In this document: piece after piece, positions 18,459-57,646 of the stretch
Position numbering within the stretch: position 1 is the stretch's first letter
How the letters are laid out: the number at the start of each line of letters is the position of its first letter
Translations under genes and position numbers: made by a program
Notes under the pieces: model-generated
What the model was told of the DNA's origin: nothing
The model's input: the letters and a program-made list of their open reading frames with translations, nothing else
Databases searched by the model: none
Virus record (IMG/VR): IMGVR_UViG_3300027834_000005
Span: 124,001-188,000 of that record
Length of the DNA stretch: 64,000 nt
Direction: 5' to 3' (one strand)

Positions 18459-19887
18459 GCATTCTTCCTACTATAGTAGTCAAACTCTGAGTATTTCTGT
18501 CAAATTTATATTCCTGATCCTCAAAAGACTTCAAATTATCATCCTTGGCACCAGTTGCCCTAGCTGTAAAAACACTAGGACTCGCCGAGGATGCATTTGT
18601 GGAAGCACCACTATTCAAATCTATGGACACGCCGTCTATCGCTACAGACCCACCAGCTTTAAGATTAGCAGCAGAACCAGATTCCATATTCAATCCAGCA
18701 CCAGACTTCACATTCACATCACTACCTGCTTCCAGATTCATCCCACTATCCACTTTAACATCCATCGCCCCTGTAGACAAAGAAAACGAAGCCGACCCAA
18801 TATTAATATCAGTCTCGATGCCCAATTCCAAAGAATCTAAAGCCTCGATATATATCTTACCGCCACTACCTGACGCTATACCTCCTACGCCCTCACCAGC
18901 GGCACCTTGATAATCTTTAGTAGCTTTGATAGCGATATCCCTACCAGCCTCAATATTAACATCTCTGTCTGCTCTGAAGTTGATATCACGCAATGCTCTA
19001 ATGGATAAGTCATTGGCCATAAAGAAGTCACCGTTACCATCTTCATCTATCTGTATCCAACCCGTACCATCACGATTTATGAAATACAACATGCCATTAG
19101 TTTCATCAACGCGTATCTGTGCACCACTTCTGGTCTTAATACTGATATGTTCGTTACCTTCACCGTCATCCATAATCAATGAATGCCCACCTTTTCTACC
19201 TTTCTTATTGGGTGAATCTGGATTTATAGGACCTGGAGTTCGCATCCCGTACACTTCTGGCGGAGACCCTCTTCTAGATGTGGACGTTGATTGTCCGCGA
19301 ATGGAATCTCTAATTAATCCTTGGGCCGCAATGCCTCGCATTCTAACTTTATCAATAGGCCTAGACGGTTTAGTACTTGCAGAACTCGTCGTATGCTTGT
19401 TATATTCACTAGTAGGCATAGGTATACTTTTATACTTTGACGGCAGATTACCTGCGTTGTACGTACTGTCAGTAGGCACTTCAGGGACAGAGCTGTTCAT
19501 ATTCTGCTGAAAAACACATCCTAACCAGAAACCTCTAGAAGGATCACCATTCAAAAAACACACTAATACTTGATTATCCAAGTCTGGCGGCACCATCCAC
19601 ATACCGTAGCTAGTCTGTGTCTGATCGGAATCGCCCAAATCTTTACCTATTTCATTTACCGGAGTGGCTCCTGCAAAGGGGGAACTATAGCTTACTATTC
19701 TCCAGCCATTTTCGTCGTCCTCGTCAGATCCAAATTCAGGAACCCATACCTTCAGTCTTCCCATGCCCTGAACATCACTATTATCTTTAATGATGCCCAT
19801 GTAAATGCCCATATTCACACCGGCCTTACCGACTGGCATGTTATTCTCTACATTACTTAACCCGTCACTTCTGGATAAACTACCCAT
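18421..19887 (-). CDS. gp5: Baseplate central spike gp5/VgrG-like (OB fold plus beta-helix, no recognisable lysozyme domain)
   Basis: GIIKDNSDVQGMGRLKVWVP...SYGMWMVPPDLDNQVLVCFLNGDPSRGFWLG OB-fold motif, then GHSLIMDD and repeated beta-strand units ending AIDGVSIDLNSG. Confidence 0.85.
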   Translation of the reverse strand: MGSLSRSDGLSNVENNMPVGKAGVNMGIYMGIIKDNSDVQGMGRLKVWVPEFGSDEDDENGWRIVSYSSPFAGATPVNEIGKDLGDSDQTQTSYGMWMVPPDLDNQVLVCFLNGDPSRGFWLGCVFQQNMNSSVPEVPTDSTYNAGNLPSKYKSIPMPTSEYNKHTTSSASTKPSRPIDKVRMRGIAAQGLIRDSIRGQSTSTSRRGSPPEVYGMRTPGPINPDSPNKKGRKGGHSLIMDDGEGNEHISIKTRSGAQIRVDETNGMLYFINRDGTGWIQIDEDGNGDFFMANDLSIRALRDINFRADRDVNIEAGRDIAIKATKDYQGAAGEGVGGIASGSGGKIYIEALDSLELGIETDINIGSASFSLSTGAMDVKVDSGMNLEAGSDVNVKSGAGLNMESGSAANLKAGGSVAIDGVSIDLNSGASTNASSASPSVFTARATGAKDDNLKSFEDQEYKFDRNTQSLTTIVGRMPTFEPCPEHTLK

Positions 19888-26589: not shown

Positions 26590-27147
26590 ATGGACCACAA
26601 GCCTTGGGAAGAAACTGACGTATGGAAATCTGAGAGCCAATATCTAATTTGGCTTCGAGGAAATCTAAGAAAAGCGTTATGGCAGCATTTTCCGCCTAGG
26701 ATTGCGTTCAAAAATGAAAGGTGCATTAACGTGACACCTAACATCAGAGAACAATATGGTCTCAGCAAGGCTTGTAAGTACGTAGGGGTGTGTGAGTTCT
26801 GTGAGGAATACCATCCCAAGTCTAAACTTGAAGTGGACCATATCGAAGGATGTGGTGCGCTTACATTAGAGAATAAATCTGAATGGATAGACCGTCTTAT
26901 ATGTTCCACATCGAATATGAGATTAGTCTGTAAGCCATGCCATAAAATTCACACTTACTCGGAACGAATGGGTATATCATTTGAGAGCGCTAAATTAGAG
27001 AAGAAAGTAATTGAATTTTCTAAAAAGCCCACGTCTATGCAGAATACATACCTCAAGAAAAGAAATCTACCCCACAATAATGCTAAAGTGAGGAAGGAAT
27101 CTTTTAGGAAGGTGCTGCTTGAAGACTCAAAGGCCGAAATCACTTAG
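26590..27147 (+). CDS. HNH endonuclease
   Basis: CEFC...EVDHI...LVCKPCHKIHT: Zn-binding CxxC pairs flanking a DH/H motif. Confidence 0.8.
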   Translation: MDHKPWEETDVWKSESQYLIWLRGNLRKALWQHFPPRIAFKNERCINVTPNIREQYGLSKACKYVGVCEFCEEYHPKSKLEVDHIEGCGALTLENKSEWIDRLICSTSNMRLVCKPCHKIHTYSERMGISFESAKLEKKVIEFSKKPTSMQNTYLKKRNLPHNNAKVRKESFRKVLLEDSKAEIT

Positions 27148-28737
27148 TTTGTAATTCCCATTTGGGTACTTATTGATGACATCTGCGATCTTCGTCTTAG
27201 TTCTATCCTGAAAACTACTACCATTGCGGTATGCAATCTTCTTAGCCGACATGAAATTCATCTCGGCTTTTGTCATGCCTGTACTTTTGTCGCTTTTCTT
27301 TCTAGGATTACCTGATGAGGTCCATTTCTTTCTTTTCTTTTTGAATACGCCTGTCTTACCTTCAACTACCGCACCCGTAAATATACCAGCTAACATGTCA
27401 GCAGTGGTTTTGTCAAGTACTATTACCTCTACTTCCCTTCCGACTTGCATAAAATCGTGAGAACGTATTGCAGTGCGACCTATAGTCTGATAAACACTCT
27501 CCAATTTGAAAGCGTCGTTAAGAACATTACCGTCTATATTACTTAATTTTTCCATAATACCCTTTACAGCAGTAGGGAATTGACATACGGTGAGTGCTGC
27601 CACTCTATGATATGACGTATATTGGTTCTGTCCGTGACTCTTTACGCTTATACTGGCTACATTATCCAAGTCATCTAGGGTCTTTACGTTACCATTTCCG
27701 TTGAAAGTCCAACTCTTATGGGTCGCATAAAGGAAATCTCCATCTGGCCAGTGTGCTGCTACTTGTGAAAAAAGTAGATCCCTAACATTCTGCTTACTTT
27801 CGACTGGCAGACCCTTCGGCTTATTATCGTGCAGCATACCTTTACTGGATTTATCATTATCATCCATTAAGTGGTATATCTTTAATAAAGATCCATGTGA
27901 GTGGGTATCCTTACTTATTAAGCTGGCCAGCGCAGTGTCTTCAACGAATTCTACGTCAAATACCTCTTTGAATAGATGGTACTGTAGGGTATTCAGGAAA
28001 TCAGCACACAGCACAGTGGTAGATTTGAACTTACTCGCTATACTGATAGGATCTACGATAGACACCGTTTGTAAATATGTATCGGTTACTTTCGCAAAAA
28101 CTGCACTGGTACGTTTCTGCATAACCGAAAGAATTCTGGAAAATTGTTTACAGTTAAGATTATCACGTTTATGATACATCTTAATGATATCTTCATACTC
28201 ATCCACATATTCTGGGTTGTCTTCTAAGCGATATATGTCCTCCACCACGTGATGGCAACTTATAAAATCAAGATACGTGTCGAATGTTTCTTCATCTGGC
28301 GTAAATCTTAGGAAGTCGAATACCGGCAACTGCTCATCTACGTACAGGGAACAGCCCTTAAGCATCGTTTTATTTGAGGTGAGGTCAGAGTCCAAATACA
28401 TCAGTAACGCCGCGTGGCTGATCACTAGAGCACCATAGGACACATCATCACATAGATCACGAATAGCTTCATCGACCTTATCTACCATTCCGCCTTGTTC
28501 AGCGGACACAGTATCCTCGTTACCTTTTTCTTCCAGAATAGCCATTGACTGCGAAGATAGTACTAACTTAGCCTTTCCGCCTTGCCTTCTTATGTCCGTG
28601 TGTGTCTGTAGTGCAAGTTTGGCAGTGGGAGCAGCATATATCGCGTTTATATGGGGTGATGTATTTATGTGAGATATAAATGCCGAGGTCTTTCCTGCCC
28701 CAACACTCGCGTTCACGTATAGGATCTGTGTTTTCAT
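27127..28737 (-). CDS. SF2-like helicase/ATPase, candidate origin-binding protein
   Basis: Walker A ASVGAGKT, motif Ia YAAPT, Walker B YVDE, motif VI YQTIGRTAIR; Lys-rich C-terminal tail. Confidence 0.7.
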   Translation of the reverse strand: MKTQILYVNASVGAGKTSAFISHINTSPHINAIYAAPTAKLALQTHTDIRRQGGKAKLVLSSQSMAILEEKGNEDTVSAEQGGMVDKVDEAIRDLCDDVSYGALVISHAALLMYLDSDLTSNKTMLKGCSLYVDEQLPVFDFLRFTPDEETFDTYLDFISCHHVVEDIYRLEDNPEYVDEYEDIIKMYHKRDNLNCKQFSRILSVMQKRTSAVFAKVTDTYLQTVSIVDPISIASKFKSTTVLCADFLNTLQYHLFKEVFDVEFVEDTALASLISKDTHSHGSLLKIYHLMDDNDKSSKGMLHDNKPKGLPVESKQNVRDLLFSQVAAHWPDGDFLYATHKSWTFNGNGNVKTLDDLDNVASISVKSHGQNQYTSYHRVAALTVCQFPTAVKGIMEKLSNIDGNVLNDAFKLESVYQTIGRTAIRSHDFMQVGREVEVIVLDKTTADMLAGIFTGAVVEGKTGVFKKKRKKWTSSGNPRKKSDKSTGMTKAEMNFMSAKKIAYRNGSSFQDRTKTKIADVINKYPNGNYKLSDFGL

Positions 28738-28763
28738 ATCTTACCTTTGTTCAAATATAGCGG

Positions 28764-28792
28764 AGTATAGCATAAATCCCATGTATTGGCAA
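28764..28792 (-). promoter_or_regulatory. Sigma70-like promoter for the helicase
   Basis: On the - strand TTGCCA-17 nt-TATACT with extended -10 TG. Confidence 0.75.
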
Positions 28793-28802
28793 CAAAGTTC
28801 CA

Positions 28803-29299
28803 ATTTTGGATCGCGGTGTTGAGTAAAGTAAAGGAATGATTTTTTTATATAATATATAATTACTAGATAGATTATAGTAGTTATCTTTATTATTTCATTA
28901 TACAAAATATTTTGTCCTTCATTTCAATTTATATGTGTGTAATTACGTCGATAATGCATCGATATGTGTCTATATGTCATTAATATTCCATTATATGAAT
29001 TGACGTCGGTTCTTCGCAAGCTCAGCTCCAACGCAAATCCACATAATTCCTTTGGTTATGTCATCGCTTCGCTCTACAAACCAATTGATATTATTTAATT
29101 TGTAGCTTAAAAACAAATAAAGGCGTACACAATATAATTATATATGTGATATGGAGGTACGACATATGACATATCTAATATTGCAGTGTCGGTTGAGTGG
29201 AATGAAATGGAACTGACCGTCATAGCAATATGTCATTATACATTAATAATTTATATTTTAATACATTAATAATATATAATGAGCACCGCGATTCAAAAT
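28803..29299. other. AT-rich non-coding element bounded by 18-bp inverted repeats; candidate replication origin or structured RNA
   Basis: Arms ATTTTGGATCGCGGTGTT (28803-28820) and AGCACCGCGATTCAAAAT (29282-29299); internal ATATGT/ACATAT repeats, a 14-bp palindrome (28902-28915) and several hairpins. Largest ORF-free gap in the window. Confidence 0.55.
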
Positions 29300-29302
29300 C
29301 TG

Positions 29303-29331
29303 TTTACATATCGAACTAAATAAGTTATAAT
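29303..29331 (+). promoter_or_regulatory. Early promoter (T4-like GTTTACA -35)
   Basis: TTTACA-17 nt-TATAAT, preceded by G. Confidence 0.75.
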
Positions 29332-29356
29332 AGTGCCACATTAAATGGAATAACAA

Positions 29357-29641
29357 ATGTATCTTAATATAAACTTCTCTTTACTAGACTTAGCCTTACA
29401 AGAAAACATAATCAATGGGTTTGAAGCCACATTCATCAAAGAAAAGCAAGGGTTATATGTGAAACTTCTCTCAGATAAGCAATTACTTGTATTTGAAGAC
29501 GTATTTCCTAGATTAATAGAGGGCACTATCTCAGTAACCGAAGAAGAACCTCAGACACACGCCTCATACGCGCCAAACCACGAATATAAATATTCATATC
29601 AGTATGACGCTAACTCAGACCCAGATCATGATCCAGAATAG
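29357..29641 (+). CDS. Small acidic hypothetical protein (94 aa)
   Basis: ATG downstream of the early promoter; its stop abuts the convergent stop at 29642. Confidence 0.55.
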   Translation: MYLNINFSLLDLALQENIINGFEATFIKEKQGLYVKLLSDKQLLVFEDVFPRLIEGTISVTEEEPQTHASYAPNHEYKYSYQYDANSDPDHDPE

Positions 29642-56400: not shown

Positions 56401-57646
56401 ATCTGAAAAATTAAACACGTTGACTACCGAAAATATATCTGGTTCTTTTTATGACTTATCTCAAGGGGAACCGAAGTTCAGATTAGTGGATGAGTTGTCA
56501 GTTGGATTACCAGGAAATGGATCTGAATCAGCCTTTGGTGAAGGTGATAGTTTCGTAAATGGAATGTTAGTGTGGTCGTGGGATGGAACAACATTCACGG
56601 ATGTATCAGAAGAAGCATCGAGTACTACAGGCTCCACCTTATCATATCCTAATTTGAATGTTGGTTCAGCACTTTATTTCTCAACGGCTCGCACCGTAGT
56701 AGACACAGGAGACTTCATGAAGTTCTATAATATAAAGATCTCGCAAACTGTTCCTACTGACAACACGGGTGAATTAGTCGCGGAATATTGGAATGGTAGT
56801 ACGTGGGTTGAATTAAATCATATGAGTACCGAAGCGGAATCGAATGGCACGTATAGGGCATTCGCTAAGGAAATATTTCAGGGAACTGGATCAGAACATA
56901 TTAGATTCGACAGTCATATAGATCCTTTGTGGGTAGCAAACGATGCTGTTGGTATGGGCATCTCTACGTATTGGATACGTATCAGAATAGAAACTGCGCT
57001 AACGGGGAACCCTACTTTTGAGAAAATTAAAATAGGAACTAACCGCACGGAAATAAATGCAGATGGGTTTATTGAATACTTTGGTGATGCTAGACCGACT
57101 AGCGCTTTGCCATTTGATACAAGTACGTTTATTGCCGCGAATAATTCACCGGCAAATAATGATGTGTATTTAAGTGACACGCTAGGCGTAGGTAGGGTAG
57201 AAAACGAATTTCAATCGGGAGTAACAGATAGATGTGGTATGGTATTGCCGTTCCCACCGGAAATAGACACCTCTATGCCGATACATGCTAAATTCCATTT
57301 TATATCGGACAGTGCAGACACAGGTACGTTTACTTTTGTTCTGAGGCACGCGAGTTCTAGGCAAGGAGATGGAGTTTATTCAAATACCGCATCAGCGCCA
57401 TCGACTGCACCAGGACAACAAACGATAACAGTTCTGAAAGCTCCGCCAGCTATACACCAGCAATTCTTAGTTGAGTTTGACTTGGACATATCTGATGTAA
57501 TAGCTCGTAACGCAGATGGGTCATCGGATTTATTCTGGCTAACGCTGCAGCGCACAGGCGGAACGGATGCCAATACAGGAAATGCAATAATGGTGCAGTT
57601 AGAAGTAACGTATGTTAGGTGGGCTTCAGGAGGTCACATAGAATGA
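53489..57646 (+). CDS. Large fibre/receptor-binding protein with domain C and a putative parallel beta-helix (1385 aa, TTG start)
   Basis: GGAGAGGA RBS; FVAKNGND..G.G..DNPYLTINKAI...VSPGIFSE is the usual entry into a pectate-lyase-like beta-helix; also carries GQGVP.GG..GQVLTK. Confidence 0.7.
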   Translation: MSIIIKNVSVSLVPINDIGITVGIGLTYDVSIIDASDVSASAVDGDIFDVVSAGDIVVIDPRDNITELGVADSLVVLRAHNDSHYGMAAGSRIIDAEDVDDTGLANGDILKWGGTDFQTVANDHDDLTNISGGGVGDYQHFTTAEKTNINAVASTTGHTGWLSGGDVSIGTNPNEVTVSAGTGRIIRYTDPLNPVVTEVSWPQLTDVPITDIATTITTTLGINSLGQLVQFPDSILERLDYKEYILIGFISHLDNTSIDQFSSSPSMVAYDGVANVADFIRSAGAVLLEGNKVSGVAGTLQLAKTSGEVFSYGTNASSEPEIPDVAPTIATLGNNFFLGHRDPSTTDTYLSVITNVIDPLQWDDNGVLTVVGNNRWTIMPVYLISAINFIVVGYGQTTYVNLSEALTDLRNGTHVWEERAQLKNSAFLGHIVVKKEATDLTDELEATFVLAPTLREALRGSSGSGNTSGGGGVSAWGDITGTLSDQTDLQSELDTLTAHTVDTANPHDTTVNNLDDTVITSPVSGEHLVYNGSSWVNDSPLVNLPLVQVRRETSMNNLGTGWNDVYWENTDFENNTDYLELSGADARYVLLKTVGFYLFEYKTTGLTSVGGRLMLDGGTYIVGSETDPVGLTSQSGLDSTRMEGIATAQVIVECTAPNQTVHLQLRSNNVQQDDTDKISMNAVALIGVQGVSGANGQGVPSGGIAGQVLTKVDGTDYNTEWAIHVPSHNEFFVAKNGNDTTGEGTNDNPYLTINKAITEINTLSPSVTNRFQVNVSPGIFSESPFTIPAGVDVVCKTSIIVAADAANDFITLDGSGNIYGADVQGVTGAGKYCIVCSGTGTSTSIIRECTIGYLSTGAIKASSTVIGHSVIISFSNIIAFSEDGVYVDTNSDVIYSEGLIFGNGTTARGVVTNGSGTCTVTSLIVESCGTGAYHNSTGTLKSVGSSFNPSNLIPVTRVGTSPLVVRSTDLESEKLNTLTTENISGSFYDLSQGEPKFRLVDELSVGLPGNGSESAFGEGDSFVNGMLVWSWDGTTFTDVSEEASSTTGSTLSYPNLNVGSALYFSTARTVVDTGDFMKFYNIKISQTVPTDNTGELVAEYWNGSTWVELNHMSTEAESNGTYRAFAKEIFQGTGSEHIRFDSHIDPLWVANDAVGMGISTYWIRIRIETALTGNPTFEKIKIGTNRTEINADGFIEYFGDARPTSALPFDTSTFIAANNSPANNDVYLSDTLGVGRVENEFQSGVTDRCGMVLPFPPEIDTSMPIHAKFHFISDSADTGTFTFVLRHASSRQGDGVYSNTASAPSTAPGQQTITVLKAPPAIHQQFLVEFDLDISDVIARNADGSSDLFWLTLQRTGGTDANTGNAIMVQLEVTYVRWASGGHIE

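What the first reader, a model, noticed from the sequence alone, without database searches (positions are those of the whole stretch)
28803..29299. 18-bp terminal inverted repeat whose only mismatches are G-T wobbles, enclosing about 460 nt
Seen: ATTTTGGATCGCGGTGTT pairs with AGCACCGCGATTCAAAAT at all 18 positions (16 Watson-Crick, 2 G-T). An internal hairpin at 29167-29235 (ATATTGC/GCAATAT, GTCGGTT/AACTGAC) also uses a wobble. Both arms sit just upstream of the -35 boxes of the divergent promoters. Inference: wobble-tolerant changes suggest single-strand pairing (a ncRNA or extruded ssDNA, reminiscent of retron a1/a2 closure, though no reverse transcriptase is present) rather than a double-strand protein site; an invertible segment or MITE-like relic is an alternative.
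Basis: partly seen in the sequence, partly recalled or inferred. Interest (0 to 1): 0.7.

Follow-up and report, generated by a model that had tools for sequence, protein, structure and literature searches.

The report
Conserved inverted repeat bounding phage control region
The 18-bp inverted repeat is real and is kept, with matching changes in both arms, in related uncultured marine giant phages, where it bounds a 0.5-kb non-coding, hairpin-rich stretch between two divergent promoters; its function, most likely a folded regulatory or replication-origin element, is still unproven.

Summary
The repeat is exactly as described: 28803-28820 pairs with 29282-29299 at 16 Watson-Crick and 2 G-T positions. 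On its own it is not beyond chance. The 347-kb phage genome has 5 such repeats, and simulated genomes have 2-8. Comparison with relatives shows that it is real. Four related lineages from marine metagenomes keep an inverted repeat at the same place. It has four base pairs changed on both sides and it bounds the same set of internal hairpins. In a close strain the gap differs at 1.3% of bases, against 5-18% in the flanking genes. The gap has no conserved reading frame, Rfam match or tRNA. The genome has no reverse transcriptase, recombinase or transposase, and the element is single-copy. This excludes retron, invertible-switch and MITE readings. The wobble argument is weak. Mismatches in the outer repeat favour the + strand and those in inner hairpin G favour the - strand. 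One strain variant is uncompensated. Best reading (0.4): the arms pair when the region is single-stranded and close a roughly 500-nt multi-hairpin domain of an origin-like or regulatory element. Main rival (0.28): the arms are mirror-image protein-binding boxes upstream of the two promoters. No transcript data could be obtained.

The parts
28803..28820 (.). Helicase-proximal arm of the outer inverted repeat (ATTTTGGATCGCGGTGTT)
   Evidence: Homologous arms occur in L001, L004 and L012. A close strain carries G>A at 28818.
29282..29299 (.). Arm of the outer inverted repeat nearest the small gene (AGCACCGCGATTCAAAAT)
   Evidence: Homologous arms occur in L001, L004, L012 and L015.
28821..29281 (.). 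Interior of the module: 461 nt, about 29% G+C against 40% for the genome, non-coding, dense in hairpins and single-copy
   Evidence: A close strain shows only 3 differences here.
28764..28792 (-). Sigma-70-like promoter of the helicase gene (TTGCCA-17-TATACT with TG extension)
   Evidence: The extended -10 box is conserved in L001, L004, L012 and L019.
29302..29331 (+). Sigma-70-like promoter of the small divergent gene (GTTTACA-17-TATAAT)
   Evidence: Counterparts were found in L001 and L012.
28826..28924 (.). Hairpin I: stems at 28826-28839 and 28915-28924 around an A+T-rich loop with two TATAAT boxes (28871-28880, 28897-28905)
   Evidence: (I2). The architecture is the same but the stem sequence differs in L001/L004/L012, L017 and L019.
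28993..29044 (-). Hairpin G: 17-position stem (13-17 pairs formed per lineage; arms 28993-29009 and 29028-29044) and loop with GCTTGCGA (29010-29027). This is the most widely conserved core.
   Evidence: 11 of 21 predicted pairs keep pairing through changes on both sides in six sequences.
29054..29074 (-). Block F (GAGCGAAGCGATGACATAACC), conserved next to hairpin G and nearly identical in L019
29152..29166 (-). Block D (TATGTCGTACCTCCA), a conserved sequence that pairs with F or with the block after hairpin G in predicted folds
29178..29231 (.). Relatives keep a CGGTCAGC...TGACCG hairpin here.
   Evidence: (I12)
29233..29282 (.). A+T-only hairpin (22-nt arms, 86% complementary) next to the right arm
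   Evidence: (I4)
27127..28737 (-). Flanking gene: 536-aa YonV-like SF2 (DEAD/ResIII-type) helicase
29357..29641 (+). Flanking gene: 94-aa orphan protein. Homologues of 37-41% identity occur in every lineage that carries the arms.

Best explanation
The two arms are the selectively maintained outer pair of a vertically inherited non-coding module of about 0.5 kb. The module fills the gap between the divergent promoters of a YonV-like helicase gene and a small orphan gene, in an uncultured marine jumbo myovirus related to PA5oct. SHOWN: the arms are complementary. Four related lineages keep them at the same position, with four pairs changed on both sides. They enclose the same ordered set of hairpins (A+T hairpin, C, D/F, G, I), whose stems also keep complementarity while their sequences change. 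There is no conserved reading frame. The module is single-copy. In a close strain it is far more conserved than the flanking genes. INFERRED: the functional form is single-stranded, and the arms then pair to close a multi-hairpin domain of about 500 nt. The most plausible single-stranded form is RNA from leftward (- strand) transcription that enters from the baseplate-hub operon, because no terminator is predicted in between. Unwound DNA is the alternative. By analogy with the transcription-dependent origins of lactococcal phage c2 and T4 oriF/oriG, I take the domain to be a cis-acting origin-like or leader/regulatory element at a point of transcriptional divergence. This functional assignment is the weakest step.
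For: The repeat is conserved and co-varies. Across 4 lineages 65/74 cells are paired and 4 pairs changed on both sides, against 0-2 in slid controls. L012 extended the helix by two independent changes relative to L004. The arms pair with probability about 1.0 in the ensemble, with 80-nt flanks, on both strands and in all four lineages. The 497-nt element folds far better than shuffles: z -3.9 on the + strand and -6.6 on the - strand, and -4.9 to -9.5 across the window and its relatives with mononucleotide shuffles. Hairpin G keeps pairing through two-sided changes at 11 of 21 pairs in six sequences. A close strain differs at 8 of 619 bases in the gap, against 5.5-17.6% in the flanking genes, where 29 of 40 listed changes are at third codon positions. 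No conserved ORF, Rfam family or tRNA was found. No terminator is predicted between the upstream - strand operon and the gap. The gap lies in the trough of cumulative GC skew at a switch of transcription direction. It is A+T-rich and holds the genome's densest cluster of (T)GACATA(T): 5 copies against 0.52 expected. T4 origins and the c2 ori share these traits (PMC3016281, PMC7150918).
Against: No transcript evidence exists; no RNA run was listed. No convincing promoter lies upstream of either arm on either strand, and both arms sit upstream of the -35 boxes of promoters that read outward. Mismatch types disagree on the strand: the outer pair favours the + strand and hairpins G and I favour the - strand. 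The strain variant 28818 G>A is uncompensated. The more distant relatives L017 and L019 keep the F-G core but not this outer pair. The interior is very A+T-rich for a stable RNA. There are only four independent lineages, so covariation statistics are weak. Near-identity of the gap between strains could reflect recent recombination rather than constraint.
Confidence: 0.4

Rival explanations
1. The arms are two inverted copies of one duplex-DNA recognition box for a sequence-specific protein of the phage or host. One copy sits upstream of each divergent promoter. The 'inverted repeat' then simply mirrors the promoters, and the protein regulates both promoters, bridges them, or marks an origin.
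For: The arms sit just upstream of both -35 boxes. The distance from the core to the -35 box is nearly constant across lineages: 10-11 nt on the small-gene side and 16-18 nt on the helicase side, although the intervening sequence varies. The core AATC[G/A]CGGT[G/A] is conserved in sequence. A near-copy (AATCGGGTGC) and two further copies of the overlapping GGGTGCGAT box occur in a different arrangement in L017. The box is a G+C-rich island in A+T-rich DNA and is unique in the genome. A small orphan gene co-occurs with the arm-bearing lineages.
Against: Identity between the arms runs 16-19 bp, beyond the conserved core, and its limits shift between lineages. That pattern fits selection on complementarity better than a fixed protein site. 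Four two-sided changes would each need co-evolution of the protein. No DNA-binding domain was found in the neighbouring proteins. The two arms lie at different distances from their promoters, about 7 bp apart in phase. The protein-DNA complex job was not folded and gives no evidence.
Confidence: 0.28
2. The repeat has no function of its own. It arose by chance or by an old duplication and persists only because the whole gap is conserved or was recently exchanged between phages by recombination.
For: A 16/18 repeat at this spacing is expected about 6 times per genome by chance. The whole gap, not only the arms, is nearly identical in the close strain.
Against: Between the distant lineages most A+T-rich spacers are no longer alignable, yet the arms persist with matched changes on both sides.
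Confidence: 0.1
3. The segment is a relic of a MITE-like non-autonomous transposon with terminal inverted repeats.
For: It has the right size, is A+T-rich, has no coding capacity, has 18-bp terminal repeats and folds strongly.
Against: The genome holds only one copy of the arms and of every inner block. There is no flanking target-site duplication. No DDE transposase, integrase or resolvase is encoded. The element sits at the same site, with a co-diverged interior, in lineages whose neighbouring helicase is only 53-56% identical.
Confidence: 0.04
4. The arms are crossover sites of an invertible DNA segment.
For: Inverted repeats flank a promoter-rich segment.
Against: The genome has no serine or tyrosine recombinase. 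The interior has the same orientation relative to the flanking genes in all lineages. Contigs of five runs show no strand-switch joints, though contigs can hide minority forms. Both flanking promoters lie outside the segment.
Confidence: 0.02
5. The element is a retron-like msr/msd unit closed by a1/a2 repeats.
For: The only support is the formal resemblance of terminal complementary repeats.
Against: The 347-kb genome has no reverse transcriptase match; the estimated completeness is 94%. The enclosed span is about twice that of known retron ncRNAs (own knowledge). No Rfam hit was found.
Confidence: 0.01

Closest known systems
Origin region of lactococcal Ceduovirus phages (c2, bIL67 and 923 types)
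   Same: Both are non-coding gaps between divergently transcribed gene blocks, flanked by promoters and free of ORFs. In c2 a non-coding transcript whose length and structure matter is implicated in initiation. Both are highly conserved within a type and show no similarity between types at the same syntenic position (PMC7150918). Here the gap is 98.7% identical in a close strain, while unrelated sequences fill the same position in L013, L014, L018 and PA5oct.
   Different: The phage group and host are unrelated and there is no sequence similarity. Replication activity is untested here. An outer 18-bp repeat is not a described feature of the c2 ori.
T4 replication origins oriF/oriG (promoter plus A+T-rich unwinding element, R-loop primed) and oriE (iterons)
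   Same: The phage belongs to the T4 superfamily. The gap lies at a switch of transcription direction and of compositional skew. It has sigma-70-type -10 boxes next to very A+T-rich DNA and a short motif repeated 5 times. An SF2 helicase gene is adjacent; in T4 the UvsW helicase controls origin R-loops (PMC3016281).
   Different: T4 origins are about 100 bp minimal elements and have no shared sequence motifs or long-range repeats. No MotA box was found. The helicase is YonV-like and did not match UvsW in a sequence search of solved structures. No replication data exist.
Long-range closing helices of large structured RNAs, and RNase III processing stems that enclose rRNA precursors (own knowledge)
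   Same: A helix of 16-19 bp brings together sequences about 480 nt apart and encloses nested hairpins. Complementarity is kept through compensatory changes.
   Different: No transcript is shown. The interior has only about 29% G+C. There is no consistent strand asymmetry. No Rfam family matches.
MITEs and Correia-type elements (own knowledge)
   Same: Terminal inverted repeats, a size of a few hundred bp, no coding capacity, promoter-like ends and a strong fold.
   Different: The element is single-copy and vertically inherited, with no target-site duplication and no transposase.
PeSL promoter/stem-loop cassettes of T4-like phages
   Same: Both are conserved motifs next to early-type sigma-70 promoters in T4-like genomes (PMC4122927, PMC2839356).
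   Different: PeSLs are multi-copy cassettes, each a local stem-loop plus a promoter, and they are spread over hyperplastic regions. Here there are exactly two copies, the arms are not stem-loops themselves, and the two promoters differ.

Membership tests
Retron (msr/msd) | Reverse transcriptase gene adjacent or elsewhere in the genome | tested here: not met
   PF00078 has no match at E<=0.001 in the 347-kb genome; the controls were positive.
Retron (msr/msd) | a1/a2 repeats that close a compact ncRNA matching a known retron RNA model | tested here: not met
   No Rfam match at gathering score or at E<=10 is relevant. The enclosed span is 461 nt.
MITE / non-autonomous transposon | Terminal inverted repeats | tested here: met
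   The arms match at 16/18.
MITE / non-autonomous transposon | Multiple copies and flanking target-site duplication | tested here: not met
   The arms and every inner block occur once in the genome. The flanks TTCCA and CTGTT are not a duplication.
MITE / non-autonomous transposon | Cognate transposase available | tested here: not met
   The phage genome has no DDE_Tnp_1, rve, resolvase or integrase match. Host transposases could not be tested.
Invertible DNA switch (fimS/hin type) | Site-specific recombinase | tested here: not met
   PF00239 and PF00589 are absent.
Invertible DNA switch (fimS/hin type) | Both orientations present in a population | tested here: inconclusive
   Contigs of 5 runs show no strand-switch joint, and all lineages are collinear. 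Contigs drop rare variants, and raw reads were not available.
Transcription-primed phage origin (T4 oriF/G, c2 ori) | Promoter next to an A+T-rich unwinding region in a non-coding gap at a transcription divergence | tested here: met
   Consensus promoters were found. The gap has 29% G+C against 40% for the genome. There is no conserved ORF. The gap lies in the skew trough.
Transcription-primed phage origin (T4 oriF/G, c2 ori) | Supports initiation of replication (R-loop, nascent DNA peak, plasmid ori assay) | not testable with these tools
   This needs infection or plasmid experiments. Only assembled contigs were available.
Iteron-type origin | Evenly spaced direct repeats bound by an adjacent initiator | tested here: inconclusive
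   (T)GACATA(T) occurs 5 times against 0.52 expected, the densest cluster in the genome. The copies are in both orientations and unevenly spaced, and no initiator was identified. L019, L013 and L018 do have tandem repeats at the same locus.
Structured non-coding RNA | Helices supported by compensatory changes | tested here: met
   The outer pair has 4 two-sided changes and hairpin G has 11 of 21 pairs. The sample is small, at 4-6 sequences.
Structured non-coding RNA | A transcript that covers the structure, with strand-specific G-U tolerance | tested here: inconclusive
   No RNA run was listed. The wobble pattern favours opposite strands in different helices.
PeSL cassette | Many copies per genome, each a local stem-loop followed by an early promoter | tested here: not met
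   There are two copies only, and neither arm is a stem-loop (PMC4122927).

The most novel reading that the evidence does not exclude
The gap encodes a new class of large (about 500 nt), A+U-rich, multi-hairpin non-coding RNA, or an origin that works through a folded single strand. It is closed by the 18-bp helix, is specific to a clade of uncultured marine PA5oct/Rak2-related jumbo phages, and has functionally equivalent but unrelated 'types' at the same genomic position in sister clades.
Probability: 0.25. Interest if true: 0.7.

Novelty: new variant of a known kind. Interest (0 to 1): 0.5.

Why it matters
Almost nothing is known about the replication origins and cis-regulatory RNAs of jumbo T4-superfamily phages. 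This locus offers a concrete candidate that can be cloned. It is a single-copy, 0.5-kb, hairpin-dense element that is much better conserved than the genes around it. It lies at a fixed genomic position where sister clades carry unrelated non-coding 'types'. That pattern is known from the functionally proven origins of lactococcal c2-type phages. If the arms act by pairing, this would be a rare case of a long-range helix organising a phage control region. If they are protein boxes, they define a new regulator-operator pair. The case also shows that a wobble-only inverted repeat in one genome is no evidence by itself, and that comparative data decide.

Tried and rejected
- **Known RNA families.** Rfam at gathering score on the window and on six related loci, Rfam at E<=10 on the gap, and ARAGORN gave nothing relevant.
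- **Retron, invertase and transposon readings.** Family searches of the whole genome found none of the required enzymes.
- **Small proteins in the gap.** Similarity between relatives appears in all six frames and switches frame, so there is no conserved ORF.
- **Origin from GC skew.** The skew trough at 146-156 kb simply follows gene orientation and is not specific to the gap.
- **Homology with PA5oct.** Its equivalent gap (L009 8529-10041) shows no similarity. Its four published ncRNAs lie elsewhere in that genome.
- **Distant homologues of the helicase.** In RB43 and Aeh1 the gene sits inside an operon with no upstream gap.
- **More homologues by DNA pattern.** Two IMG/VR scans and one GTDB scan gave only chance hits in G+C-rich coding DNA. 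Protein-guided scans of IMG/VR and JGI metagenomes found only the phage itself.
- **Protein-DNA complex.** The job with the 94-aa protein and an arm duplex was not folded by the tool and gives no evidence.
- **RNA runs.** None was listed.
- **PeSL cassettes.** Rejected on copy number and structure.

Full report
**Context.** The window is bases 124001-188000 of a 347,232-bp virus record with 40% G+C.
- Its genes place it in the T4 superfamily. They include a late sigma factor like gp55, a gp46/47-type nuclease, a baseplate hub, a portal and a major capsid protein. The capsid protein is 82% identical to that of Pseudomonas jumbo phage PA5oct and 66% identical to the capsid proteins of Escherichia jumbo phages such as PBECO4.
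- The finding lies in the 619-bp gap 28738-29356, which has 29% G+C.
- On one side, on the - strand, is a 536-aa protein at 27127-28737. Language-model and structure look-alikes identify it as a YonV-like SF2 helicase.
- On the other side, on the + strand, is a 94-aa orphan gene at 29357-29641.

**The observation.**
- The arms at 28803-28820 and 29282-29299 match at 16/18, and both mismatches are transitions giving G-T on the + strand.
- The inner hairpin lies at 29178-29231.
- A promoter-like site starts 3 nt beyond the right arm on the + strand, and another lies 10 nt beyond the left arm on the - strand.
- Each arm sequence occurs once in the genome.
- The repeat is not statistically remarkable on its own. 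The genome has five inverted repeats of at least 16/18 with a 50-600 nt gap. Six simulated genomes with the same dinucleotide content have 2-8, mean 5.8.

**Relatives.** Exact-protein look-ups gave the same locus in uncultured marine phages.
- L001/L002 come from Tara Oceans; their helicase is 53% identical. L004's helicase is 56% identical. L012 is a third locus, and L015 is a short contig end.
- All carry a gap of 614-652 bp with an inverted repeat at the equivalent position, but with altered sequence: AAATCACGGT[A/G]T[C/T]GTG.
- In a four-lineage alignment, 65 of 74 cells of the outer pair are paired.
- Four pairs changed on both sides while staying complementary. The window differs from the relatives at three pairs, for example CGCGG against CACGG, and L001 differs at GGTG against GGTA.
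- Controls with the partner slid by 1-3 columns give 0-2 such pairs.
- L012 extended the helix outward by two independent substitutions relative to L004. The repeat is therefore selected, not accidental.

**The whole gap is an organised module.** All four lineages fold into the same nested architecture. In order it comprises the outer pair, an A+T hairpin, hairpin C, a long D/F stem, hairpin G, and hairpin I next to the helicase-side arm.
- The window element folds far better than shuffles, with z -3.9 on the + strand and -6.6 on the - strand.
- With 80-nt flanks the arms pair with probability about 1.0 on either strand in every lineage.
- Hairpin G, a 17-position stem with a GCTTGCGA loop, keeps pairing through two-sided changes at 11 of 21 predicted pairs across six sequences.
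- Those six sequences include two more distant relatives. L017 has a helicase 24% identical to the window's, and its helicase gene is inverted. L019 has a helicase 33% identical.
- L017 and L019 keep the F-G core but not this outer pair. They carry other inverted repeats around promoter-like A+T-rich loops instead. L017 has three copies of a GGGTGCGAT box, the third overlapping a near-copy of the arm core (AATCGGGTGC).
- Similarity between the gaps appears in all six frames and switches frame, so nothing is coding.
- Every block is single-copy in the genome. The motif (T)GACATA(T) occurs five times against 0.52 expected, the densest cluster in the genome.

**Population data.** Contigs of four marine-sediment runs carry a close strain.
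- Its flanking genes differ from the window at 5.5-17.6% of bases, and 29 of the 40 listed changes fall at third codon positions.
- The gap differs at 8 of 619 bases and the interior at 3 of 461.
- One variant, 28818 G>A, lies in the left arm and is not compensated at 29284.
- No strand-switch joint was seen.
- This island of near-identity fits strong constraint. Recent recombinational exchange of the segment cannot be excluded.

- All mismatches in the outer pair give G-T on the window + strand.
- Hairpin G shows 14 G-U cells in 8 columns, against one C-A, on the - strand. Hairpin I in the relatives also favours the - strand.
- The strain variant is wobble-compatible only on the - strand.
- Z-scores show no consistent strand preference across lineages.
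- No promoter is evident upstream of either arm.
- The hub operon on the - strand reads toward the gap, and no terminator is predicted in between. A - strand RNA that contains both arms is therefore plausible.
- No RNA run was listed.

**Excluded readings.**
- Retron: the genome has no reverse transcriptase.
- Invertible switch: there is no recombinase, and all lineages are collinear.
- MITE: the element is single-copy, with no target-site duplication and no transposase, and it is inherited vertically.
- PeSL cassettes: these are multi-copy stem-loop plus promoter units.
- Known RNA families: none matched.

**Interpretation.** Complementarity, rather than sequence, is what evolution preserves here. 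This holds for the outer pair and for the inner stems; hairpin I has unrelated stem sequences in different lineages. I therefore favour a function in single-stranded form, with the arms as the closing helix (0.4).

The main rival is that the arms are mirror-image duplex boxes for a protein upstream of the two promoters (0.28). It is supported by three things: the placement of the arms, the conserved core, and the arm-like box copies in L017.

For the role of the module, the nearest functional precedents are two kinds of transcription-dependent phage origin.
- In c2-type lactococcal phages the ori is a non-coding gap between divergent gene blocks, flanked by promoters. A structured non-coding transcript is implicated. 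The ori is highly conserved within a type and unrelated between types (PMC7150918). The same pattern is seen here: L013/L018, L014 and PA5oct carry unrelated gene-poor sequences of 0.8-1.5 kb at the same position, some with tandem repeats.
- In T4, origins combine a promoter with an A+T-rich unwinding element, lie at switches of transcription direction, and are controlled by a helicase (PMC3016281).

Replication activity is wholly untested, so the origin assignment remains an inference.

Noticed in passing
window 18952-18969 / 19486-19503 and 56766-56783 / 57135-57152: Two more 16/18 inverted repeats with gaps of a few hundred nt lie in the same window. Together with the finding they match the number expected by chance.
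   Followed up: partly
L013 7979-9062 and L018 4967-5991: At the syntenic position after the hub module, these more distant relatives have a non-coding gap of about 1 kb. It contains direct repeats of about 125 bp, each holding the palindrome TCGATCTAAAGATCGA, which looks like iterons. L013 also has a masked run of N.
   Followed up: partly
L019 1-100 and 421-603: Upstream of a helicase homologue (33% identical) there are at least six tandem repeats of 15-16 nt (TATAGATAT(T)ATGTRR). There is also a 24-bp inverted repeat (23/24), with about 135 nt between its arms, that encloses two 28-nt direct repeats.
   Followed up: partly
L014 4650-7478: The helicase at this locus is 942 aa long and has LAGLIDADG/Hom_end hits, so it is probably a YonV-like helicase interrupted by an intein.
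   Followed up: no
L004 1640-1690, L012 2020-2070, L015 3060-3110: In the relatives the start codon of the small divergent gene lies 7 nt after the extended -10 box (TGTTATAAT-N7-ATG). This suggests a leaderless mRNA. Gene callers placed the start further upstream in L004 and L015. The window copy has a 25-nt leader.
   Followed up: partly
L024 133-154, L030 12-33, L045 5529-5550, L056 434-455: Desulfovibrionaceae MAG contigs carry a dispersed hairpin (ATTTGCGT ... GAGCTTGCGA ... ACGCAAAT) that resembles hairpin G. It is not arrayed. The resemblance is probably coincidental, because the search pattern forced part of it.
   Followed up: partly
L017 2053-4473: In this relative the helicase gene is inverted relative to the hub module, so the conserved F-G core lies at the gene's 3' end. 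The core therefore keeps its orientation relative to the hub genes, not relative to the helicase.
   Followed up: partly
L006 (JGI contig of 410,284 bp) versus the 347,232-bp record: The same phage locus lies on a JGI metagenome contig that is 63 kb longer than the virus record holding the window. The record may be incomplete (94% by CheckV), or the longer contig may contain terminal redundancy.
   Followed up: no
window 26590-27147 and 27127-28737: An HNH endonuclease gene (phrog_1985) converges on the helicase gene and overlaps its 3' end by 21 nt. The pair is conserved in L001, L002, L003 and L012.
   Followed up: no
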